From sequence record LR756508.1: 64,000 nucleotides of DNA; one strand, 5' to 3'. A program made the position numbers and the translations under genes. The notes under the pieces were generated by a model. It was given only the letters and a program-made list of their open reading frames with translations, made no database searches and had not been told where the DNA came from. Shown here in pieces: positions 35,436 to 54,583 of this stretch. Positions within the stretch are counted from its first letter, which is position 1; each line of letters starts with the position of its first letter.

Positions 35436-37289
35436 ATGGTTAATGTTGAGCAGGGAGATGTAAAAGAGGTTTTATCAGGTAAAGAAGAGCACACTTTTGA
35501 TTCGGTTGTTACCGATCCTCCTTATGAGCTTGGTTTCATGGGGAAAAAATGGGATGATAGTGGCATAGCGTTTGATAGGAAGATGTGGTCGGAGGTTTAC
35601 AGGACCATGAAACCCGGCGCTTGGGTCTGCGCTTTTTCTGGCACACGGACCCACCACAGAATGATGGAGGCCATGGATGACGTGGGGTTTGACATGTATG
35701 GCATTTTGATGTGGGTTTACGGGTGTTTGAGTGAGGACACTGAGATATTAACAGAAGACGGGTGGAAGGATCTATACGAATATGATAGCGAAAAGGTGGC
35801 TTGCTGGGATAGTAATAAAAATGAAATACGGCTGTCTTCTATCCATAATAAGTTTGTTTATGAGCACGGTGGGGACATGATCCGCCTCCAAAACTGCTAT
35901 ACAGATCAGCTTCTCACTCCCAATCATCGCGTCTATTATAGAAAAGAACACAAAAACAAAAAAGACCAGTTAAGTAAACAATTTAAGTCAAAAGACTGGC
36001 GTATTGAGCAAGCTCAAAATCTAATAAATGGAGAAACTTTAAACCTTCCGTTATCTTCCTATCATGATGGTGAAGGTATCGGTGGAACACAATATGCTCA
36101 GCTATCAGCCTATTTTTATGCCAGCGGTAAAATTGATGAGGAAAGTAGTAGGGTGAGAATCGTCCAAAACTCTGAAAATCGAGAGCATATAAACCGCCTT
36201 GATAATCTTTTAGAAAAATTAAGAATTAATTTTGAAAAAAAGAAGGGTAAAAATCAACATGAAATTATTTGGCTTATTAAAAAGTCAGAAAATTTGAAAA
36301 AGAGTTTTAATGAAAAAACTCCAGGGTGGAACCTATTATGGAACATGACATTAGAAGAAAAGGAGGTATTTCTTGAAACTACAGTAAATTTAAACGAAAA
36401 TATAACACAGAATCTACATCAAAAAGAACGGAAGAACTGGTTCCAGGCATTATTACACTGTATTGGAAAAGAAGGTATTAACGTTGGAGAAAACGACTTT
36501 CAGTTGAATCTCCATTCGAATTCAACCACTCAAGTTGAGCCTAATAAACAAAGGCGAGTTAAAAATTATAGTGGAAAAGTCTGGTGCGTTGAAACTTCCA
36601 CAGGTGCTTTTATGGCGAGAAGAAACGGAAAAGTGTTTATTACGGGAAACAGTGGGTTTCCAAAAAACCATGACGTTTCCAAAGCTATTGACAAAGAGCT
36701 TGGAAAATACGACGAGCGTGAAGTAGTTGGAAAAAAGTCAACCAAAATCCATTTAGAAAATTTAGGCGATGCTGGATACGGTGAAGAATGGGAAGTAACA
36801 GAGCCATACACCGACGAGGCAAAAAAGTGGGAAGGATGGGGAACTGCTTTAAAGCCTGCCTATGAACCGATAGCACTGGCTAGAAAAAAAGGTGATAGAG
36901 TTAATCCTGATCTCTCGAAGGGTTCCAGATTTTTCTACTGTCCCAAGGCAAAAAGATCAGAGCGAAATATTGGGTGCGAAGACAATGAGCATCCTACGGT
37001 GAAACCTATAGAACTCATTTCTTATCTGGTCCGGTTAATCACTCCTCAAGATGGGAAGGTCCTAGATCCTTTTGTTGGAAGTGGCTCCACTGCTATAAGC
37101 GCAGTATTAGAAAACCGTAGTGGACTCGGGATTGAGTTAGATGAAGAAAGCCACTCCCTCGCTTCTAAAAGAGTAGAGTACGTTAAGAACAACCTGATAC
37201 AAGTCTATGACCAAATTTATAACGATCCTAGTAACAACATAACTAAAAAACAAGCCTCGACAATCGAGCACGGCTTCTGGAGCGAGTGA
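35436..37289 (+). CDS. Beta-class DNA methyltransferase A (intein-containing)
   Basis: VVTDPPYELGFMG, HPTVKP, VLDPFVGSGST. Confidence 0.92.
   Translation: MVNVEQGDVKEVLSGKEEHTFDSVVTDPPYELGFMGKKWDDSGIAFDRKMWSEVYRTMKPGAWVCAFSGTRTHHRMMEAMDDVGFDMYGILMWVYGCLSEDTEILTEDGWKDLYEYDSEKVACWDSNKNEIRLSSIHNKFVYEHGGDMIRLQNCYTDQLLTPNHRVYYRKEHKNKKDQLSKQFKSKDWRIEQAQNLINGETLNLPLSSYHDGEGIGGTQYAQLSAYFYASGKIDEESSRVRIVQNSENREHINRLDNLLEKLRINFEKKKGKNQHEIIWLIKKSENLKKSFNEKTPGWNLLWNMTLEEKEVFLETTVNLNENITQNLHQKERKNWFQALLHCIGKEGINVGENDFQLNLHSNSTTQVEPNKQRRVKNYSGKVWCVETSTGAFMARRNGKVFITGNSGFPKNHDVSKAIDKELGKYDEREVVGKKSTKIHLENLGDAGYGEEWEVTEPYTDEAKKWEGWGTALKPAYEPIALARKKGDRVNPDLSKGSRFFYCPKAKRSERNIGCEDNEHPTVKPIELISYLVRLITPQDGKVLDPFVGSGSTAISAVLENRSGLGIELDEESHSLASKRVEYVKNNLIQVYDQIYNDPSNNITKKQASTIEHGFWSE
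35724..36650 (+). mobile_element. Intein in MTase A (309 aa, Cys1, Gly-Asn end, +1 Ser)
   Basis: WVYG|CLSEDTEILTEDGW...LTPNH...VWCVETSTGAFMARRNGKVFITGN|SGFPK; degenerate LAGLIDADG-like centre (SAYFYASG). Confidence 0.92.
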
Positions 37290-37336
37290 AATGCCATTTC
37301 AATTCTCCACACTCTGAATACAGTTTTCGTTTTCTG

Positions 37337-38626
37337 ATGCAAAAAATTCTTCAGGGTAATTCAAAACAAATACTGAAGGATATTGAGAAAGAGTCCGTCC
37401 ACTCCGTCGTAACTGATCCTCCTTATGAGCTAGGGTTTATGGATCGAGATTGGGATGAAAGCGGAATTGCCTTCGATGAAAACTTTTGGATACAGGCGAA
37501 AAGAGTTTTGAAACCTGGTGGTTACGTGCTATCTTTCGGTGGATCACGAACTCACCATAGACTTATGGTAGCTATCGAAAATGCTGGCTTCGAGATCAAA
37601 GGGTGCTGTATGTGGTTATATAATACAGGATTTCCGAAATCTCACGACGTTTCCCGTGGAATAGACAAAGAATTGGATATGGAGGATAAACGGGAGGTTA
37701 TAGCCACTGAAGAAAGGTATAACGAGCCTTCGGGCCTCGTGAAAGCTGGTCGGGGACCTGAGGCAAGAGAAAAAATTACTCGCGAGATTACAGCTCCCGC
37801 ATCTCAAGAGGCAAAAAAATGGGAAGACTGGGGAACCGCCTTGAAGCCTGCCTACGAGCCAATCGTTATGGCACGAAAACCACTTTCTGAAGACACTATA
37901 GCCGAGAATATTTTAAAGCACTCGGTGGGTGCTATTAATATTGATGGCTGCAGGTTGCCCACCTCCGACGATACGCAGCGGAAAGTTGGAGACAGGCAGA
38001 CTGGTACTTACGATGAAGTCGGTGGAATGTTTGAGAAAGGAAAATACGAAGGAATGAAAGCTGGTGGGCATGAAGACGGAAGATGGCCTACTAACCTGAT
38101 GTTAAACAATAGGGCTACGGTGCTTTTAGACAGACAAGGAGGAAAAACAAAAAGTAAGGTAAGAGAACCGACGGGTGGTAGCCAGTCTTCCAACCGAGTG
38201 GCTATGGGAGAAATAACAACTCCAGATACATCAAAACGGGGGTATAACGACTCAGGTGGAATATCAAGATACTTCTACTCCCCTAAGCCGCACTCGAAGG
38301 AGAAAAATATCGGGTGTGAAGACAACTATCACCCAACTGTGAAGCCAATCGAGTTTATAAGCTATTTAATTCGTCTGGTTACGCCAGAAGACGGAAAAGT
38401 AATGGACCCCTTTCTTGGAAGTGGAACAGGGGCAATAGCTGCACTCTTAGAGGACAAAGATTTTATTGGAATTGAACTAAATGAAGAAAAAGCTGAATTG
38501 TCCAAGAAGCGAGTTGAACATGTAAAAAATAATTTAGAAGATGTAAAAAGACAAATTTTTGGAGACCCAAGTAATGAAATAACAAATAAAGAAAAGTCTA
38601 CAATTGATCATGAATTCTGGGGATAG
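37337..38626 (+). CDS. Beta-class DNA methyltransferase B
   Basis: VVTDPPYELG, HPTVKP, VMDPFLGSGTG; ATG 37337 preferred as start. Confidence 0.92.
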   Translation: MQKILQGNSKQILKDIEKESVHSVVTDPPYELGFMDRDWDESGIAFDENFWIQAKRVLKPGGYVLSFGGSRTHHRLMVAIENAGFEIKGCCMWLYNTGFPKSHDVSRGIDKELDMEDKREVIATEERYNEPSGLVKAGRGPEAREKITREITAPASQEAKKWEDWGTALKPAYEPIVMARKPLSEDTIAENILKHSVGAINIDGCRLPTSDDTQRKVGDRQTGTYDEVGGMFEKGKYEGMKAGGHEDGRWPTNLMLNNRATVLLDRQGGKTKSKVREPTGGSQSSNRVAMGEITTPDTSKRGYNDSGGISRYFYSPKPHSKEKNIGCEDNYHPTVKPIEFISYLIRLVTPEDGKVMDPFLGSGTGAIAALLEDKDFIGIELNEEKAELSKKRVEHVKNNLEDVKRQIFGDPSNEITNKEKSTIDHEFWG

Positions 38627-39608: not shown

Positions 39609-40763
39609 ATGAACTCAAAAACGTCTCTACATCTTGCCGATTCCAAAAAGAAGCTATTGAAATTCGACCAGAATAGTTTTCACTCCTGCGTGTGTGATCC
39701 GCCCTATGAGCTTGGAATCATGAACAAAAGCTGGGACGAAAGCGGCATCGCTTTTGATAGCGAATATTGGAGTAGAGTTTATCGGGTTTTAAAACCTGGC
39801 GCTCACCTACTTGCTTTTGGTGGTAACAGAACTCATCACAGGCTTATAGTTGCAATTGAAGACGCTGGTTTTGAAATTAGAGATTGCCTCATGTGGGTTT
39901 ATTCGAATGGTCTCAGCAATTCTCATGACGTTTCAAAAGCTATTGATAAGCACCACGGAAAAAGCGAAGAGCGTGAAGTTGTAGACACTTACACGAAAAC
40001 CGAGTCGTATACAAAAGAATATTCTGGAGAGGCAAGGGGCGAAACCCCCTGGGGGCAGGCAGTGATTGAAGTTACAGCTCCCGCTACCCAGGACGCAGAG
40101 AAGTGGAATGGATATGGAACCAAGCTGAAACCAGCTTACGAGCCGATTGTTCTTGCCCGAAAACCGATCTCAGAAAAAAATATAGCGAAAAATGTATTGA
40201 GGCATTCTGCTGGAGCCATAAACATTGGCGACTGCAAAATTGGAAACGAGAGGCTTCCTGCAGTTGATCGTGGCAATTCGAAAAATACTGATTTCCAAAG
40301 CGGTGGCGATACGCCAAAGCGTGAAGGGAGGTGGCCTACAAACTTTATTATAGATGAGGAGGTAGCAGGCGAGTTGGACTGGCAGAGTAGAGACCGAAAT
40401 GCTTCTCGCTTTTTCTATTCGCCTAAAGCTCAACAGGACGAAAGAAACATTGGTACTGCAGAAAATAACCATTCTACTGTAAAGCCTATTGAGCTTATGG
40501 CGTATCTTGTTAGGCTTGTTACTCCTCCTGAAGGTGAAGTTTTAGACCCATTTATGGGAAGTGGGAGCACTGGAGTAGCTGCGATTTTGGAAAACGTGGA
40601 CTTCACGGGCATTGAACTCCGAGAGGAAAGTTTTGAAATAGCAGAAGACCGAATTCAGTATACAAAAAGAAATTACGTAAAAGTGAGAGATCTTATTTTT
40701 GATGATCCTCATAACGAAGAAACAAACAAAGAAAAGTCTGCCATGAATCACGGGTTCTGGTAA
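39609..40763 (+). CDS. Beta-class DNA methyltransferase D
   Basis: VCDPPYELG, HSTVKP, VLDPFMGSGSTG. Confidence 0.92.
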   Translation: MNSKTSLHLADSKKKLLKFDQNSFHSCVCDPPYELGIMNKSWDESGIAFDSEYWSRVYRVLKPGAHLLAFGGNRTHHRLIVAIEDAGFEIRDCLMWVYSNGLSNSHDVSKAIDKHHGKSEEREVVDTYTKTESYTKEYSGEARGETPWGQAVIEVTAPATQDAEKWNGYGTKLKPAYEPIVLARKPISEKNIAKNVLRHSAGAINIGDCKIGNERLPAVDRGNSKNTDFQSGGDTPKREGRWPTNFIIDEEVAGELDWQSRDRNASRFFYSPKAQQDERNIGTAENNHSTVKPIELMAYLVRLVTPPEGEVLDPFMGSGSTGVAAILENVDFTGIELREESFEIAEDRIQYTKRNYVKVRDLIFDDPHNEETNKEKSAMNHGFW

Positions 40764-51021: not shown

Positions 51022-51862
51022 AGATTTACTTTTTGAACAGTCAAATCCAAAAGAGTTAGCTGAAAAATTTATTAAAAAGGTCGAAAGTGGCGAATGGACC
51101 ATCCCCCAGAAGAAAGGAATCGACCTGTGGCGTGGAACGAATAGAGAGGTAATGGTTGGGGTAAAAGAGGAGTATACCAAAAACAGGAAGCCGATGAACA
51201 CCTCTGCCGACACTCAACAAATGTTGGATATAGTTGCTAGAAGGCAGATGGCCGAATGGCCGCTTCGAACTTTTTCACGGTTTGCTTCTACACGTCTTAG
51301 TTTCGTCCAGTCTTATGGCACGCCTCATTATGTATTCCCCCGTAAAAATTCGAAAATTGCTTCATTTGAAAGAGACGCCTTCATAACTTATTTTGGCAGG
51401 TATAACGAAAATCCCGAGCACTTTGTTAAAAAGTTTAGAAAGTTTTTTGATAAAACGGAGAAGGACTGGAATTATATCCAAGAAAAACTTGGAGAAGAGA
51501 TAGCGGATTTTCTTTCCGCTTATTTCTTAGCTGTTGATGGTGGCGATTTTAATCACTTCAAAAAACTAGCGAGTAAGTATGAAATTAGTAAACACGTTGA
51601 AGTGTTCGAGAGAGCTCATAATCTTCTAGCCGAAGGTGACGTAAAAATGAGCGTTTTTGGTTCAAGTCACCTCTATGATGCAGTTATTACGGGTAAGAAA
51701 TTAGTAGAAAACATATCTACCTATTTTGAAGAAGGAAAGCGGGGAATAGTAAAAGAATCGGAGGAGCTGATTATTCAAGGCGACCTGCTTCATCTTAAAA
51801 AGTCTTTCGCCGATGAATACCTCAAATTCGAAAACAATAGCTGGCAGATTGATATTTTTTAA
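51011..51862 (+). CDS. ADP-ribosyltransferase-like paralog 7 with N-terminal leader
   Basis: MKLKDLLFE; LWRG; WPLRTFSRFAST..SYG; SEELII. Confidence 0.6.
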   Translation: MKLKDLLFEQSNPKELAEKFIKKVESGEWTIPQKKGIDLWRGTNREVMVGVKEEYTKNRKPMNTSADTQQMLDIVARRQMAEWPLRTFSRFASTRLSFVQSYGTPHYVFPRKNSKIASFERDAFITYFGRYNENPEHFVKKFRKFFDKTEKDWNYIQEKLGEEIADFLSAYFLAVDGGDFNHFKKLASKYEISKHVEVFERAHNLLAEGDVKMSVFGSSHLYDAVITGKKLVENISTYFEEGKRGIVKESEELIIQGDLLHLKKSFADEYLKFENNSWQIDIF

Positions 51863-51868
51863 AGGGTT

Positions 51869-54220
51869 ATGATTGATCTTAAAACTGGCGATTGTCGGGA
51901 TATATTGAGCTCTTATCCCGAGGCTACCTTCCACTCCTGCGTTACAGATCCTCCTTATGAACTCGGTTTTATGGGGAAGAACTGGGATCAGAGCGGCGTT
52001 GCTTTCGATGTTGATACCTGGTCTGAAGTTTACCGAGTTTTGAAGCCTGGAGCACATCTTCTGGCTTTCTCGGGAACCCGAACTCATCACAGAATGATGG
52101 TTGCTATCGAGGACGCTGGATTTGAGCTAAGAGATACTCTCATGTGGGTTTCAGGATGTATCACTCCAGACACAGAAATTCTTACCAGTGAAGGATGGAA
52201 AAAACACAATCAACTTAAAATTGGAGAAAATGTAGTTTGTTATGACAAAGACACAGACTCTTATCAATACGGACCGATTCAGCAAAAATTGGAAAAACAT
52301 AACCAATCTACAGCCTTCCGAATTCGAGGAGATCGTACAGACCAAATCGTCAGTCCAGAACATTGCGTCATCGTTGAACGAGATGGAAATTTTGAATTTG
52401 AAAGAGCGTGGAGACTGGCACGGAAACAGGAAATATCCGTACCCATATTGGAAGATTTGCGAGCAGTGCGAAAAGATCTTTCCAGCTATGAGCAAAGAGC
52501 AGGCGAAACGCAACAAAACCTGCAACCCGAAATGCGCTCACGAACAAATATCAAAGAAGCGAACTGGAAACCTGATTCCTATGGAAAAGAGGGACGGCAC
52601 GGTTCAACTCAAATGCGAGGAATGCAGGAAAGAATTTTACAAATGGAGGAACAACATCTCGGAAGGAGAAAGGGGAGACTTTTGTTCCAAAAGTTGTTAC
52701 TTCAAGTGGATGGAGAAAAGCGAAGAGTTAACCGAACACATGCGAGAGATAAGGTTGGAAGGAAGACGAAGCGAAGAAAAAATGGAAAAGCTGAGAGAAA
52801 GGATGACAGGTTCTACAAATCCAAGTTGGAAGGGGGGTGTAACTTACAAAAATACAAAAGGAAACTACAAAAACACAATACTTGTTCAATGTCCCGAAGA
52901 GTTCAGCGAGATGGCAAGAAAGGCTGGCTATGTTCTCGAACATCGGCTCAAAGTCGCCCAAAAAATCGGTCGACCACTCAAGAGCGAAGAAGTGGTTCAT
53001 CACATCGATCAAGACCCGCAGAACAACAAAATCGAAAACCTAATGCTATTTCGAAACGACAAAGACCACAAACTCCACGAACATCACGGAGAACCTGCAC
53101 CGATTTGGCAACCATCGAGCCATTAGATTATGACGGAATGGTATGGTGTGTAAAAGTCCCAACGGGTGCGTTTGTCGCCCGAAGAAACGGAAAAATGTTT
53201 GTAACTGGAAACAGTGGATTCCCGAAGTCTTATAGCATAGACAAAGATATTGACAAAGAACTTGGCGTAGAAGATAAAAGAGAAGTCGTAGAAGAAAAAG
53301 AGTGGAGGGTCGGTGGAGGAAATGTCTTAAACTTAAGAGAAGGAGAAGCAGAAACGAAAACGCAGCAGATAAGTAGGCCAGCTTCAAAAGAGGCTAGAAA
53401 GTGGAACGAATGGACTACGTCTTTAAAACCTGCTTACGAACCCATTACTTTAGCTAGAAAACCGATTTCTGAGCAAAACGTCGCTAAAAACGTTCTGAAG
53501 CATGGAACTGGAGCAGTAAACGTGAAAGAAACGCGAATCGGAGACGAAAAGAGAGTTAACCCTCCAGCGAAGAACAAAGGGGGTGGAAATAGCCTTCACA
53601 TGAGCAAAGAAGGAATGCCCGACGACGCAGAGGGCAGGGCAACTGAGGGCAGGTGGCCTACTAACCTTATTTTGGATGAGCGGGCTTCTGTTTTATTAGA
53701 TAACCAGAGTGGAGACTTACATCCCCGTGGAAACACCACTCCCACGAAAAGAAAGAAAAGTGAAGGAATATGGGGAAACCACTCGCCTTCTTATGGAGTC
53801 GGCAAGTCTGGTAAGGTCGATTCGGGGAGCGAGGGGGGAGCGTCTAAATTTTTCTACTGCCCGAAAGTCCGTGGCTCAGAGAGAAACCTCGGTTGCGAAG
53901 ACGGAGAAAACGATCACCCAACGGTTAAGCCAATTGAGCTTATGGCTTATCTAATTCGGCTCGTTACTCCCGAAGACGGAAAAACGCTCGATCCGTTTGT
54001 TGGAAGTGGATCAACTGTTTTAGCTTCGATTTTAGAACAGAAAGACGCTACTGGAATTGATTTAGATGAGGAAAACATTCAACTTACAAGAAAGCGGGCT
54101 GACTACTTTCAAAAAAACTTCCAAGAAGTTTACGATTTTTTTTGCGACGATCCTGGAAACGAAATAACTCGACAGGAGAAATCAACAATTGATCATAGTT
54201 TTTGGAATCTTAGAAATTAG
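51869..54220 (+). CDS. Beta-class DNA methyltransferase E (intein-containing)
   Basis: CVTDPPYELGFMG, HPTVKP, TLDPFVGSGST. Confidence 0.92.
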   Translation: MIDLKTGDCRDILSSYPEATFHSCVTDPPYELGFMGKNWDQSGVAFDVDTWSEVYRVLKPGAHLLAFSGTRTHHRMMVAIEDAGFELRDTLMWVSGCITPDTEILTSEGWKKHNQLKIGENVVCYDKDTDSYQYGPIQQKLEKHNQSTAFRIRGDRTDQIVSPEHCVIVERDGNFEFERAWRLARKQEISVPILEDLRAVRKDLSSYEQRAGETQQNLQPEMRSRTNIKEANWKPDSYGKEGRHGSTQMRGMQERILQMEEQHLGRRKGRLLFQKLLLQVDGEKRRVNRTHARDKVGRKTKRRKNGKAERKDDRFYKSKLEGGCNLQKYKRKLQKHNTCSMSRRVQRDGKKGWLCSRTSAQSRPKNRSTTQERRSGSSHRSRPAEQQNRKPNAISKRQRPQTPRTSRRTCTDLATIEPLDYDGMVWCVKVPTGAFVARRNGKMFVTGNSGFPKSYSIDKDIDKELGVEDKREVVEEKEWRVGGGNVLNLREGEAETKTQQISRPASKEARKWNEWTTSLKPAYEPITLARKPISEQNVAKNVLKHGTGAVNVKETRIGDEKRVNPPAKNKGGGNSLHMSKEGMPDDAEGRATEGRWPTNLILDERASVLLDNQSGDLHPRGNTTPTKRKKSEGIWGNHSPSYGVGKSGKVDSGSEGGASKFFYCPKVRGSERNLGCEDGENDHPTVKPIELMAYLIRLVTPEDGKTLDPFVGSGSTVLASILEQKDATGIDLDEENIQLTRKRADYFQKNFQEVYDFFCDDPGNEITRQEKSTIDHSFWNLRN
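52157..53212 (+). mobile_element. Intein in MTase E (352 aa) carrying an out-of-frame HNH gene
   Basis: WVSG|CITPDTEILTSEGW...SPEH...VWCVKVPTGAFVARRNGKMFVTGN|SGFPK. Confidence 0.9.
52383..53126 (+). CDS. HNH homing endonuclease with Zn ribbons, nested in the +1 frame inside the intein
   Basis: CEQC, CNPKC, CEEC, FCSKSC, NPSWKGG, YVLEHR, VVHHIDQDPQNNKIENL. The frame is open from 52242; ATG 52383 is the likely start. Confidence 0.88.
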   Translation: MEILNLKERGDWHGNRKYPYPYWKICEQCEKIFPAMSKEQAKRNKTCNPKCAHEQISKKRTGNLIPMEKRDGTVQLKCEECRKEFYKWRNNISEGERGDFCSKSCYFKWMEKSEELTEHMREIRLEGRRSEEKMEKLRERMTGSTNPSWKGGVTYKNTKGNYKNTILVQCPEEFSEMARKAGYVLEHRLKVAQKIGRPLKSEEVVHHIDQDPQNNKIENLMLFRNDKDHKLHEHHGEPAPIWQPSSH

Positions 54221-54226
54221 TTTTTT

Positions 54227-54583
54227 ATGTCTGATCACGAAAGTGCTAATGAAGCTGTAGATGATCTTGTCCAGGAAATGGAAACTTATAATTTTGACAT
54301 TTCTCTGGGCGAAGAAAAAGAAGCTAGGGGGAATAATAAAGGTAGGGTCAAAGAGCTAATACACAATCCCTCTGAAAAAATTTTTCTTGTTCCACTTGAC
54401 ATTAAATTCTTTAACGAAGAGGTCGAAGGAGTTAAAGGGTTTGACGTCATGAAAGCTATGCTGTTTGAGAACTTGTGGCACCAGAAGCATAACAAGTGGC
54501 CCTGGGAGGAAGATGAAGATCCGAGAGATGAAGATCTTCTTCATGTCTACGAACAGAATCCTGATTTAACTGAAGAAAACTAA
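54227..54583 (+). CDS. Hypothetical acidic protein
   Basis: 118 aa ORF. Confidence 0.55.
   Translation: MSDHESANEAVDDLVQEMETYNFDISLGEEKEARGNNKGRVKELIHNPSEKIFLVPLDIKFFNEEVEGVKGFDVMKAMLFENLWHQKHNKWPWEEDEDPRDEDLLHVYEQNPDLTEEN

What the first reader, a model, noticed from the sequence alone, without database searches (positions are those of the whole stretch)
52157..53212. Intein with its homing endonuclease encoded entirely in another reading frame (about 740-880 nt of dual coding)
Seen: MTase E reads 783 codons without a stop and contains an intein (Cys at 52157 to Gly-Asn at 53212). Inside it, the +1 frame holds a complete HNH endonuclease (open 52242-53126, likely ATG 52383) with Zn ribbons and an HH..N..N core. 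The intein frame over that stretch is R/K/Q/G-rich and unlike any domain, as expected for a passenger frame kept free of stops so that splicing can restore the MTase. Known: inteins normally carry their endonuclease in frame. I recall similar nested-frame endonucleases being reported in actinobacteriophage methylase inteins, so it may not be unprecedented, but it is rare. Inference: an HNH gene invaded a mini-intein out of frame and is translated by internal initiation or frameshifting.
Basis: partly seen in the sequence, partly recalled or inferred. Interest (0 to 1): 0.8.

Follow-up and report, generated by a model that had tools for sequence, protein, structure and literature searches.

The report
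Methylase intein hiding an out-of-frame endonuclease
A phage DNA-methylase gene is interrupted by a self-removing protein insert (intein) whose DNA, read one base later, also encodes a complete HNH homing endonuclease; this is real and conserved in dozens of related phages, but it is a new example of an arrangement first described in 2025-2026.

Summary
MTase E (51869-54220) carries a 352-aa intein (52157-53212), and the +1 frame holds a 294-codon HNH ORF (52242-53126). Given the HNH protein, about 31 stops are expected in the methylase frame. None is seen (P about 1e-19).

It is not an error or a one-off. Seventy-one further loci carry the same intein at the same methylase site (W-x-Y-G|S-G-F-P-K). 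In all of them the HNH is in frame +1 and the intein frame has no stops. The most variable codon position switches from the intein wobble (codons 1-105) to the HNH wobble (106-315) and back (316-352). So the middle of the intein is only a stop-free tether.

ATG 52242, inside the N-terminal splicing domain, is the better candidate. That gives about 230 nt selected in both frames.

Free-standing relatives have 12 and 52 stops in the equivalent frame.

Out-of-frame endonucleases in inteins (cyanobacterial dnaX; actinophage EndoVII-like) and an out-of-frame HNH in a methylase without an intein (ShiLan domain) are already published. This is therefore a new member of a known kind. It is large and deeply diverged. 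Splicing, HNH translation and cleavage are inferred, not shown.

The parts
51869..54220 (+). MTase E precursor ORF (783 aa, N6/N4 DNA methyltransferase interrupted by an intein)
   Evidence: ORF listed. Pfam N6_N4_Mtase E 8e-27, split into two stretches. DPPY motif found.
51869..52156 (+). N-extein (aa 1-96), ends ...L-M-W-V-S-G
   Evidence: It is 62% identical to the N-extein of the paralogue at 35436.
52157..53212 (+). Intein, 352 aa: Cys1 ... Gly-Asn, followed by Ser+1
   Evidence: Boundaries. The same site and ends occur in 72 loci. A profile of the family hits solved inteins (6zgq E 1e-9). The model matches HINT folds (Foldseek E 2.5e-6).
52157..52471 (+). Intein N-terminal splicing domain (intein aa 1-105; block B reads S-P-E-H)
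   Evidence: pLDDT is 89-97 up to about model residue 110. Intein wobble is the most variable codon position in codons 1-105. Homologous to canonical inteins L005 and L164.
52472..53101 (+). Passenger stretch of the intein frame (intein aa 106-315): stop-free tether with no protein-level constraint
   Evidence: No Pfam hit. Low confidence: pLDDT is below 50 at model residues 145-154 and 193-312 and mostly 52-55 (one block 72) in between. The most variable position is intein codon position 1, which is HNH position 3. R+K content varies from 9 to 29% among relatives.
53102..53212 (+). Intein C-terminal splicing domain (blocks F and G: VWCVKVPTGAFVARRNGKMFVTGN)
   Evidence: pLDDT 95-97. Amino acids are near-invariant while wobble entropy is 1.8-2.0 bits. 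It is 69-86% identical to the C-domain of canonical LAGLIDADG inteins.
53213..54217 (+). C-extein (aa 449-783), begins S-G-F-P-K; carries the SAM-binding FxGxG region
52242..53126 (+). HNH homing-endonuclease ORF in frame +1 (294 aa, stop TAG 53124-53126)
   Evidence: Homologues lie in frame +1 inside the intein in all 72 loci. Model mean pLDDT is 86.5.
52242..52244 (+). Most likely HNH start codon (ATG formed by intein codons Tyr29-Asp30, TAT GAC)
   Evidence: Conserved in all four closest relatives. An ATG sits at this or the adjacent column in 47 of 63 loci. Intein wobble differences are 0.14 in codons 29-100 against 0.41 elsewhere, P 4e-28.
52383..52385 (+).
   Evidence: An ATG occurs at this column in 6 of 63 loci. 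It lies inside predicted helix 38-56, pLDDT above 90.
52458..52535 (+). Zinc ribbon 1 of the HNH protein (CxxC...CxxxC, aa 73-98)
   Evidence: The cysteines are conserved in alignment A4.
52614..52697 (+). Zinc ribbon 2 (aa 125-152)
   Evidence: Weak zf-FCS match.
52818..53081 (+). HNH catalytic core (NPSWKGG ... VVHHIDQD ... NNKIENL ... DHKLHE, aa 193-280)
   Evidence: Pfam HNH_3 covers aa 234-270. Invariant columns include H253, H254, N262, N266 and H276.
53010..53012 (+). CAA (Gln257) at a column that is His in at least 90% of relatives
   Evidence: CAT here would create TGA in the intein frame.

Best explanation
MTase E is translated as a precursor. A class-1-like intein interrupts it in a conserved motif, W-x-(Y/S)-G | S-G-F-P-K. 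Only the first ~105 and last ~37 intein codons are protein-coding in the functional sense; they form the HINT splicing domain. The 210 codons between them are a stop-free, disordered tether.

The same DNA read one base later encodes a 294-aa HNH homing endonuclease. It has N-terminal helices, two zinc ribbons and an HNH_3 core. It starts at an ATG inside the N-terminal splicing domain, most likely 52242, and stops 86 nt before the intein ends.

Shown here:
- both frames are open far beyond chance;
- the arrangement (same site, same +1 frame) is conserved in 72 loci;
- selection acts on the intein frame at the two ends and on the HNH frame in the middle;
- about 230 nt at the 5' overlap are constrained in both frames.

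Inferred from what is known of inteins and HNH homing endonucleases:
- ribosomes in the methylase frame make a precursor that splices to an intact methylase (junction WVSG-SGFPK) and discards the intein with its tether;
- ribosomes that initiate internally make the HNH;
- the HNH cuts intein-less methylase alleles, so that repair copies in the whole intein-plus-HNH cassette.

Selection on the host keeps the intein frame open and able to splice. Selection on the element keeps the HNH.
For: Anatomy and statistics in the window.

The intein is genuine.
- A family profile hits the AceL NrdHF intein (E 1e-9) and the Spl DnaX mini-intein.
- The AlphaFold model has pLDDT above 90 for both splicing segments and low confidence (about 35-72) between them. 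Its best Foldseek matches are all inteins or other HINT-fold autoprocessing domains.
- The N and C blocks are homologous to canonical in-frame LAGLIDADG inteins: L005, L004, mycobacteriophage Bobi/ShiLan, and window 35724-36650.

Conservation.
- 118 of the best 120 protein hits are methylases with this intein at this site. 114 show the passenger-frame shadow of the HNH motif. None carries an in-frame HNH_3 annotation.
- In 72 loci with DNA, the HNH is always in frame +1 and the intein frame has 0 stops. The HNH is intact in 70 of 72.
- Of 3654 HNH codons that precede an AA/AG/GA-initial codon, none ends in T, against 24.9% elsewhere. Synonymous shuffles predict 9.4 stops per locus.

Frame-specific selection: the phase of the most variable codon position switches at intein codons ~105 and ~316.

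Dual constraint at the 5' overlap.
- Intein wobble entropy is 0.4-1.1 bits in codons 51-77, against about 1.9 in the C domain.
- In the close clade, wobble differences are 0.14 against 0.41, P 4e-28.
- HNH residues 21-60 are predicted as helices with pLDDT above 90.
- The same 'NIP...LLNE.E' segment is kept in the free-standing relative L176, whose intein-equivalent frame has decayed.

Start codon: an ATG in the open +1 frame occurs in 62 of 63 loci against 43.2 expected; 0 of 20000 simulations reach that.

Controls: free-standing relatives L176 and L177 have 52 and 12 stops in the intein-equivalent frame. The paralogous LAGLIDADG-type intein in this window has closed alternative frames.

Decay products expected from a homing cycle are present: L150 and L151 have an internally deleted HNH; L112 and L123 have a stop in the HNH while the intein frame stays open; L057 and L165 are mini-inteins.
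Against: - No expression, splicing or cleavage data exist for any member.
- Pfam and NCBIfam intein models hit only below threshold (Hint_2 E 0.005; TIGR01445 E 0.065).
- The penultimate intein residue is Gly, not His. Block F carries Cys where class 1 inteins usually have Asp, and the closest solved relative was deposited as a class 3 intein. The splicing chemistry is therefore not settled.
- No Shine-Dalgarno sequence precedes ATG 52242. This is uninformative, because only 4 of 47 window genes have one. No sigma-70-like promoter lies upstream on the + strand.
- The window's HNH has Gln at a column that is His in at least 90% of relatives.
- Foldseek of the whole HNH model gave no significant PDB match; I-HmuI scored E 1, probability 0.41.
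- Distances between splicing domains and between HNH sequences correlate only weakly (rho 0.21), so the two parts may recombine.
Confidence: 0.8

Rival explanations
1. Sequencing or assembly artefact: two compensating indels turned an ordinary in-frame HNH intein into an apparent out-of-frame one.
For: In-frame HNH inteins are reported in phages (cited in bioRxiv 10.1101/2025.01.02.630785). The window comes from a metagenome-assembled phage record.
Against: With indel errors, the intein frame across the HNH would hold about 31 stops; it holds none. The same +1 arrangement is found in 71 independent loci from different samples. None of the 120 best protein relatives has an in-frame HNH_3 domain.
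Confidence: 0.01
2. The HNH is made by a programmed +1 ribosomal frameshift inside the N-terminal splicing domain. The product would be an N-extein / half-intein / HNH fusion, not an independently initiated protein.
For: The frame is invariably +1. Intein wobble positions are unusually conserved around codons 61-77, including a TTG-TTG pair kept in 46 and 55 of 64 loci. There is no Shine-Dalgarno sequence.
Against: An ATG in the open +1 frame is strongly enriched, 62 of 63 against 43 expected. A frameshift would not need one. The invariant frame follows from common descent alone, because any indel that is not a multiple of three breaks one of the two frames. I did not recognise any known +1 slippery or stop-codon context. 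The free-standing descendants L176 and L177 begin with their own ATG. The conserved wobble stretch is explained by +1-frame protein coding (helices with pLDDT above 90).
Confidence: 0.08
3. In this particular phage the HNH ORF is a silent relic. Only the need to keep the methylase readable and the intein spliceable is under selection, so the element no longer homes.
For: The window copy has Gln at a conserved His column. Degenerate copies exist in the family: L112, L123, L150, L151. Methylase inteins persist without an HNH as mini-inteins: L057, L165.
Against: The window ORF is full-length, with all invariant family residues of the core present (H253, H254, N262, N266, H276). Across the family and in the window's own clade, variation concentrates on HNH third positions. 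That means purifying selection on the HNH protein up to the recent past. By my own alignment with the I-HmuI motif (from memory, not a tool result), the Gln lies at a non-catalytic position.
Confidence: 0.1
4. The insert does not splice. Like the ShiLan domain, it stays in the methylase as a tolerated surface insertion.
For: A close HNH relative sits in frame +1 directly in a methylase ORF with no intein (L172). The penultimate His is missing and curated intein models score below threshold.
Against: Cys1, the block B His, block F/G residues, the terminal Asn and the +1 Ser/Thr are invariant or nearly so across 63 diverged loci, while their wobble positions are saturated. That is the signature of selection for a working splicing domain. 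The fold is a confident HINT domain. The insert sits within a conserved motif, not in a variable loop.
Confidence: 0.05

Closest known systems
Cyanobacterial dnaX intein with a LAGLIDADG endonuclease in an overlapping +2 ORF (Phillips, DeSimone & Gogarten, bioRxiv 10.64898/2026.09.14.751524; first suggested by Gorbalenya 1998 as cited there)
   Same: The endonuclease gene lies between the N and C splicing domains in another frame of the same strand. The in-frame middle is disordered. Selection is frame-dependent. Mini-intein derivatives coexist.
   Different: The endonuclease family differs (LAGLIDADG, not HNH_3), as do the frame (+2, not +1), the host gene (dnaX, not a methylase) and the host organisms (cellular cyanobacteria, not phages). 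That paper reports Shine-Dalgarno motifs; this phage hardly uses them.
Actinobacteriophage inteins with an endonuclease VII-like gene in frame 3, or antisense LAGLIDADG / VSR-like genes (Gosselin, Arsenault & Gogarten, bioRxiv 10.1101/2025.01.02.630785)
   Same: Phage inteins whose homing endonuclease is a separate overlapping ORF. The authors propose the same model: a free-standing endonuclease entered the intein coding sequence.
   Different: Their hosts are DNA polymerase, minor capsid, terminase and thymidylate synthase, not methylase. Their only HNH inteins are in frame. They state that the second ORFs typically lie outside the splicing domain. Here the HNH ORF overlaps the N-terminal splicing domain by about 77 codons under dual constraint.
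[quoted passage not shown]
   Same: Same host gene family, and an HNH with zinc ribbons hidden in another frame while the methylase frame stays free of stops. ShiLan gp65 also carries a canonical intein at exactly the site used here.
   Different: The ShiLan domain has no splicing domains. It sits at a different site (after LKPSYEPV..KP), is in the third frame, and its HNH is only distantly related; it serves as outgroup in the tree. Here the HNH lies inside an intein that can remove the passenger peptide.
Fractured genes: split inteins with a free-standing endonuclease gene between the halves (Dassa et al., NAR 2009, PMC2677866)
   Same: An endonuclease ORF lies between the N and C intein halves. 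The closest solved relative of this intein (AceL NrdHF, 6zgq) is a split intein.
   Different: There the host gene is broken into two ORFs and splicing occurs in trans. Here one continuous 783-codon ORF is maintained.
Canonical in-frame LAGLIDADG inteins at the same methylase site (mycobacteriophages Bobi and ShiLan; window 35724-36650)
   Same: Identical insertion point (W-x-Y-G|S-G-F-P-K) and homologous N and C splicing blocks, up to 86% identity in the C block.
   Different: Their endonuclease is read in the intein frame and their alternative frames are closed.

Membership tests
Intein (HINT protein-splicing element) | N-terminal nucleophile (Cys/Ser/Thr) as first residue | tested here: met
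   Cys at 52157. Invariant in alignments A1 and A3.
Intein (HINT protein-splicing element) | Block B T/S-x-x-H motif | tested here: met
   S-P-E-H in the window, S-R-N-H in most relatives. His69 is invariant.
Intein (HINT protein-splicing element) | C-terminal Asn followed by Ser/Thr/Cys at +1 | tested here: met
   ...V-T-G-N | S-G-F-P-K. Asn is invariant, and +1 is Ser (Thr in one locus, L008) in all 72 loci.
Intein (HINT protein-splicing element) | Penultimate His (common, not universal) | tested here: not met
   Gly in every member, including the canonical LAGLIDADG relatives.
Intein (HINT protein-splicing element) | HINT fold and sequence relationship to solved inteins | tested here: met
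   Family profile against PDB: 6zgq E 1.1e-9, 7cfv E 0.006. Model against PDB: 16 intein or other HINT-fold matches at E <= 1e-3. Curated Pfam and NCBIfam models score only below threshold.
Intein (HINT protein-splicing element) | Insertion within a conserved host motif that is continuous in intein-less alleles | tested here: met
   L172 reads YLYG-SGFPKS uninterrupted. Window paralogues read WLYN-TGFPK and WVYS-NGLSN.
Intein (HINT protein-splicing element) | Splicing class (1 versus 3) | tested here: inconclusive
   Cys1 fits class 1. The invariant block F Cys (VWC) and Thr at G:5 resemble the class 3 signature, but there is no Trp at B:12. The nearest structure was deposited as class 3. The class definitions are from my own knowledge.
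Intein (HINT protein-splicing element) | Actual protein splicing | not testable with these tools
   Needs expression plus western blot or mass spectrometry.
HNH endonuclease (Pfam HNH_3, beta-beta-alpha-metal fold) | Match to the curated family model above its cut-off | tested here: met
   PF13392, 35.4 bits against a cut-off of 24.8. Twelve PHROG HNH families, best E 1e-17.
HNH endonuclease (Pfam HNH_3, beta-beta-alpha-metal fold) | Catalytic His, structural Asn and distal His/Asn present | tested here: met
   H253, H254, N262, N266 and H276 are invariant columns and are present in the window. One non-core conserved His is Gln.
HNH endonuclease (Pfam HNH_3, beta-beta-alpha-metal fold) | Structural match to a solved HNH enzyme | tested here: inconclusive
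   I-HmuI (1u3e) ranks second, but at E 1 and probability 0.41. The multi-domain model probably weakens the global search.
HNH endonuclease (Pfam HNH_3, beta-beta-alpha-metal fold) | Site-specific cleavage and homing | not testable with these tools
   Needs a cleavage assay on the intein-less allele.
Intein with homing endonuclease in an overlapping reading frame | Endonuclease ORF between the splicing domains, same DNA, different frame | tested here: met
Intein with homing endonuclease in an overlapping reading frame | Intein frame free of stops beyond chance | tested here: met
   P about 1e-19 in the window. 0 of 3654 at-risk codons end in T across 61 loci.
Intein with homing endonuclease in an overlapping reading frame | Frame-dependent purifying selection | tested here: met
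   The codon-position entropy phase switches at codons ~105 and ~316. The close clade shows the same.
ShiLan domain (intein-less out-of-frame HNH in a methylase) | No protein-splicing domains flank the HNH insertion | tested here: not met
   The window insert has confident N and C HINT segments. It is therefore not a ShiLan domain, although L172 is ShiLan-like.
Fractured gene / split intein with free-standing endonuclease | Host gene divided into two separate ORFs | tested here: not met
   One continuous 783-codon ORF.
Group I / II intron carrying an endonuclease ORF | Match to an intron RNA family | tested here: not met
   Rfam scan of 51500-54500 at E <= 1 gave only a sub-threshold snoRNA match.

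The most novel reading that the evidence does not exclude
The first ~55-75 residues of the HNH arose by overprinting on the intein's N-terminal splicing domain and became a folded, selected part of the endonuclease. About 230 nt would then encode two structured protein segments in two frames. This intein-plus-HNH pair would be an old, co-adapted two-gene homing element, and it would itself have seeded free-standing HNH genes. L176 still carries the overprinted 'NIP...LLNE.E' segment, and both free-standing copies branch inside the nested clade. It may also have seeded intein-less, ShiLan-like insertions in methylases (L172).
Probability: 0.45. Interest if true: 0.7.

Novelty: new member of a known kind. 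Interest (0 to 1): 0.55.

Why it matters
Inteins whose homing endonuclease is a separate, overlapping gene bear on how mobile inteins are assembled: a splicing domain first, with endonucleases arriving later. Until 2025 they were barely documented.

This case adds a third endonuclease type and frame (HNH_3, +1). It adds a new host gene, and a family large and diverged enough to measure selection in both frames: at least 72 loci with DNA, and 118 of the best 120 protein hits.

It also shows that gene callers and Pfam-based annotation miss the arrangement. The methylases are annotated with PF01555 only, or the gene is split.

It links the puzzling ShiLan-type insertions to an intein-borne relative.

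It offers a natural example of long dual coding that could be tested with simple expression experiments.

Tried and rejected
- A viral-contig scan with the single HNH protein found no relatives. The scan with an intein alignment succeeded.
- Pfam and NCBIfam on the intein pieces gave only sub-threshold Hint/intein matches. Intein identity therefore rests on the profile-versus-PDB search, the fold, and homology to canonical inteins.
- Foldseek of the HNH model and the HNH profile against PDB sequences gave nothing significant beyond weak zinc-finger and I-HmuI matches.
- Rfam found no intron-like RNA.
- The promoter and terminator scan was at background level.
- The Shine-Dalgarno search is uninformative, because the phage rarely uses one.
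- Alignment A2 used wrong coordinates for four loci. It was replaced by A4.
- Three apparently free-standing HNH genes (P0152, P0132, P0134) turned out to be nested copies that gene callers had split. P0144 was not on record. True free-standing controls came from P0137 and P0145.
- The correlation between splicing-domain and HNH distances was weak (rho 0.21), so it is not used as evidence of strict co-inheritance.
- Pfam confirmed LAGLIDADG in only one of the same-site canonical inteins. The others rest on visible LAGLIDADG-like motifs and a sub-threshold hit.
- I looked for remnants of the intein frame in free-standing L176 and saw none.


Full report
**1. What is in the window**

The window is part of LR756508.1, an unannotated 484-kb 'uncultured phage' record. 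MTase E lies at record positions 299869-302220.

ORF 51869-54220 reads 783 codons without a stop. Pfam finds an N6_N4 DNA methylase in two pieces separated by about 350 residues.

The insert begins with Cys at 52157 and ends Gly-Asn at 53212, followed by Ser-Gly-Phe-Pro-Lys.

Frame +1 is open from 52242 to the TAG at 53124-53126, giving 294 codons. It matches Pfam HNH_3 above the curated cut-off and a dozen PHROG HNH families.

The in-frame middle of the insert matches nothing. There are no N bases nearby.

**2. Is the double open frame more than chance?**

HNH codon positions 1, 2 and 3 are methylase-frame positions 2, 3 and 1. A stop therefore appears in the methylase frame whenever an HNH codon ending in T precedes a codon starting with AA, AG or GA.

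The HNH protein has 117 such junctions. With the window's codon usage, 30.9 +/- 4.2 stops are expected and none is found; the analytic estimate is P = 10^-18.7. T-ending codons are halved, 16% against 34%.

No other gene in the window has an alternative-frame opening longer than 117 codons.

**3. The insert is an intein**

Curated intein models hit only below threshold. The evidence therefore comes from elsewhere.

- Related viral contigs carry canonical inteins with an in-frame LAGLIDADG domain. Their N block (C-x-x-x-[DE]-T-E-I-L ... T-P-x-H) and C block (V-D-Y-D-G-M-V-W-C ... F-V-A-R-R-N-G-K-V-Y-V-T-G-N) align with the window's.
- A profile of 36 family members finds solved inteins by sequence: AceL NrdHF 6zgq at E 1e-9 and Spl DnaX at E 0.006.
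- An AlphaFold model of the insert with five extein residues on each side has pLDDT 93-97 for the first ~105 and last ~40 intein residues, and low confidence (about 35-72) between them. Its 16 Foldseek matches at E <= 1e-3 are all inteins or other HINT-fold autoprocessing domains (Hedgehog, BIL).

Cys1, the block B His, the terminal Asn and the +1 Ser/Thr are present and invariant or nearly so in relatives.

Two features are atypical. The penultimate residue is Gly. Block F carries an invariant Cys, as in class 3 inteins, although Cys1 is also invariant. I leave the splicing class open.

**4. The arrangement is a conserved family**

A protein search with the intein region returned 689 hits. 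The best 120 all cover the whole 352 residues at 32-55% identity. Nearly all are annotated with PF01555 only, and none has an in-frame HNH_3 annotation.

Of those 120, 118 have the intein at the same methylase motif. In 114 the passenger frame shows the shadow of the HNH motif NP[AS]WKGG.

Scanning genome and viral contig collections with an intein alignment gave 160 loci.

- In 72 of them, counting the window, a homologue of the HNH (36-48% identity) lies inside the intein.
- In all 72 it is in frame +1 and the site is W-x-Y-G | S-G-F-P-K.
- In all 72 the intein frame has no stop.
- In 70 of 72 the HNH frame is intact.

Four closer relatives (51-55% identity in the intein frame) fetched by exact protein look-up show the same arrangement.

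Across 61 loci, none of 3654 at-risk HNH codons ends in T, against 24.9% of the other codons. This excludes a sequencing or assembly artefact.

**5. Which frame is under selection, and where**

I used codon-aware alignments of 63 distinct loci.

| Intein codons | Most variable position |
|---|---|
| 1-105 | intein position 3 |
| 106-315 | intein position 1 (= HNH position 3) |
| 316-352 | intein position 3 |

The C-terminal domain shows near-invariant amino acids on top of saturated wobble positions, 1.8-2.0 bits. That is strong purifying selection on splicing residues.

The middle is selected only as HNH. Its intein-frame translation varies freely (R+K content 9-29%) and is predicted with low confidence, much of it disordered. 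'Dual coding' over the middle ~630 nt therefore means HNH coding plus stop avoidance.

**6. The 5' overlap is genuinely dual-coding, and the start is probably 52242**

Intein wobble positions are unusually conserved in codons ~51-77 and 96-101: 0.4-1.1 bits at four-fold sites, against about 1.9 in the C domain.

In the window's own clade of five, pairwise wobble differences are 0.14 in codons 29-100. They are 0.41 in codons 1-28 plus 325-352 (Fisher P 4e-28).

All four close relatives keep an ATG at the position of 52242. Across the family, ATGs cluster at that column or its neighbour (47 of 63), a few codons on, or at +1 codon 47.

At least one ATG in the open +1 frame upstream of the HNH body is present in 62 of 63 loci. 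Synonymous shuffling of the intein frame predicts 43.2, and 0 of 20000 simulations reach 62.

The AlphaFold model of the 294-aa protein has mean pLDDT 86.5. Residues 21-60, encoded on top of intein block B, form two helices with pLDDT above 90. Met48 (52383) lies inside the second helix.

The free-standing relative L176 keeps the same 'NIP...LLNE.E...KRVYPYWK.C' segment, although its intein-equivalent frame is full of stops. So that segment is selected as part of the HNH protein.

At the 3' end, the HNH tail overlaps the C-terminal splicing domain by about 25 nt.

**7. Controls and relatives**

- Two truly free-standing homologues (L176 and L177, 46% and 39% identical) have 52 and 12 stops in the intein-equivalent frame. 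The open passenger frame is therefore not a by-product of HNH composition.
- In a tree of the HNH core, rooted with the ShiLan-type HNHs, both free-standing genes fall inside clades of intein-nested genes. L176 pairs with L090 at 100/87 support, and L177 lies inside a 100/88 clade. This suggests escapes from the nested state. The tree has only 104 columns, so I treat the result as suggestive.
- A third state exists in L172 and the P0150-P0152 clusters. A close HNH relative (41% identity, E 2e-34) sits in frame +1 directly in a methylase ORF, eight codons after an intact YLYG-SGFPKS site. There is no intein, and the methylase frame is again free of stops. This resembles the published ShiLan domain.
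- ShiLan gp65 itself has a canonical LAGLIDADG-type intein at exactly the site used here, plus its more distant HNH in frame +2 further downstream.

**8. Decay products**

- L150 and L151 are shortened inteins with internally deleted HNH genes.
- L112 and L123 have one stop in the HNH while the intein frame stays open.
- L057 and L165 are mini-inteins at the same site.

This is what a homing cycle predicts. It also shows that the intein frame is maintained independently of the HNH.

**9. Mechanism**

The frame structure, its conservation and the selection pattern are shown here. The following steps are inferred from established knowledge of inteins and HNH homing endonucleases:

- protein splicing restores the methylase (WVSG-SGFPK) and discards the tether;
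- the HNH is translated by internal initiation;
- the HNH cuts intein-less alleles, so that repair copies in the whole cassette.

Initiation signals cannot be judged, because only 4 of 47 genes in the window have a Shine-Dalgarno-like motif. No sigma-70-like promoter precedes the ORF.

A +1 frameshift is not excluded, but the enrichment of ATGs makes it unnecessary.

The window's HNH has Gln (CAA, 53010-53012) at a column that is His in at least 90% of relatives. CAT there would create TGA in the intein frame. By my own alignment with the I-HmuI motif, this position is not catalytic, but the window copy's activity is unproven.

**10. Comparison with the literature**

- The ShiLan domain paper describes an out-of-frame HNH in mycobacteriophage methylases without any intein (PMC11855218).
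- A 2025 preprint reports actinophage inteins with an EndoVII-like gene in frame 3 and with antisense LAGLIDADG or VSR-like genes. The hosts are polymerase, capsid, terminase and thymidylate synthase. Its only HNH inteins are in frame.
- A 2026 preprint shows a +2-frame LAGLIDADG gene in the cyanobacterial dnaX intein, with frame-dependent selection.
- Fractured genes place a free-standing endonuclease between split-intein halves (PMC2677866).

I found no report of an HNH in an alternative frame of an intein, or of this methylase-intein family. The library searched is limited to open-access papers and bioRxiv.

The principle is therefore known. This is a new member: another endonuclease type, frame and host gene. 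Its distinctive points are the size and depth of the family, the long doubly constrained overlap with the splicing domain, and the link to ShiLan-like and free-standing relatives.

**11. Verdict**

Novelty is modest and interest moderate.

Noticed in passing
window 35436-37289 (intein 35724-36650): A paralogous N6/N4 methylase (617 aa) in the same window carries a second intein at the same motif (MWVYG|C...FITGN|SGFPKN). It is 309 aa, of the Bobi/ShiLan type, with an in-frame LAGLIDADG-like middle (sub-threshold Pfam LAGLIDADG_3, E 0.002). Its alternative frames are closed. One phage genome thus holds both intein types at homologous sites.
   Followed up: partly
window 37286-38626 and 39609-40763: Two more paralogous methylases (46-47% identical to the MTase E exteins) lack an intein. 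They have altered residues at the insertion point: WLYN-TGFPK and WVYS-NGLSN. They may be resistant target sites.
   Followed up: partly
L172 1-800 (JGI 3300068289 contig; proteins P0150-P0152): A close relative of the HNH (41% identity) is nested in frame +1 directly in a methylase ORF, eight codons after an intact YLYG-SGFPKS site. It has no intein, and the methylase frame has no stops over 160 codons. This is a ShiLan-domain-like state of the same HNH lineage.
   Followed up: partly
L165 2501-4400 (IMG/VR contig, 257 kb): A 140-aa mini-intein sits at the methylase site. The methylase ORF then stops right after KPSWEPFLVGRKP, and a ShiLan-type HNH ORF follows in frame +1. The position matches the ShiLan insertion site, but here the gene is split.
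   Followed up: partly
L176 118-1203 and L177 417-1097: These are truly free-standing relatives of the HNH. L176 has an added N-terminal HTH-like region and an extra zinc ribbon, yet keeps the segment that overlaps the intein in nested copies. Both branch inside nested clades in the HNH tree.
   Followed up: partly
L173 and L174: The same +1 architecture occurs in two contigs with very acidic proteins. Gene callers split the methylase and called the HNH as a separate gene, so automated annotation hides the arrangement.
   Followed up: yes
window 52223-52244: GGAG at 52223-52226, then a two-codon ATG-TAG mini-ORF in the +1 frame at 52230-52235, lie just upstream of the probable HNH start at 52242. 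Whether this matters for initiation is unknown.
   Followed up: no
family alignment, intein codons 72-73 (window 52371-52376): A TTG-TTG pair in the +1 frame is kept in 46 and 55 of 64 loci. It is formed by T at the wobble positions of the intein's Leu-Val codons in C-L-V-E-R. It is explained here as part of the HNH 'LLNE' helix, but an initiation or recoding role is not excluded.
   Followed up: partly
whole window: Only 4 of 47 genes have a Shine-Dalgarno-like motif 3-12 nt upstream. This suggests a host that does not rely on Shine-Dalgarno pairing. The window holds at least five DNA methylase genes with DPPY or NPPY motifs: 29187, 31601, 35436, 39609 and 51869.
   Followed up: no
L010-L085, L147, L158 (about 65 loci): Related canonical inteins of about 320 aa, and mini-inteins of about 148 aa, are inserted at a conserved R-V-G-F-Q | T-P-F-T-N motif of a large protein (about 700-1900 aa). 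They occur in many bacterial and archaeal MAGs. I did not identify the host protein.
   Followed up: no
window 52770-52821: Sub-threshold Rfam match to the archaeal C/D-box sR17 (23.5 bits against a gathering score of 36). I take it as chance.
   Followed up: no
L170 994-1236: A small GIY-YIG ORF lies just upstream of the closest relative's intein-bearing methylase. It is absent from the otherwise similar contig L169.
   Followed up: no
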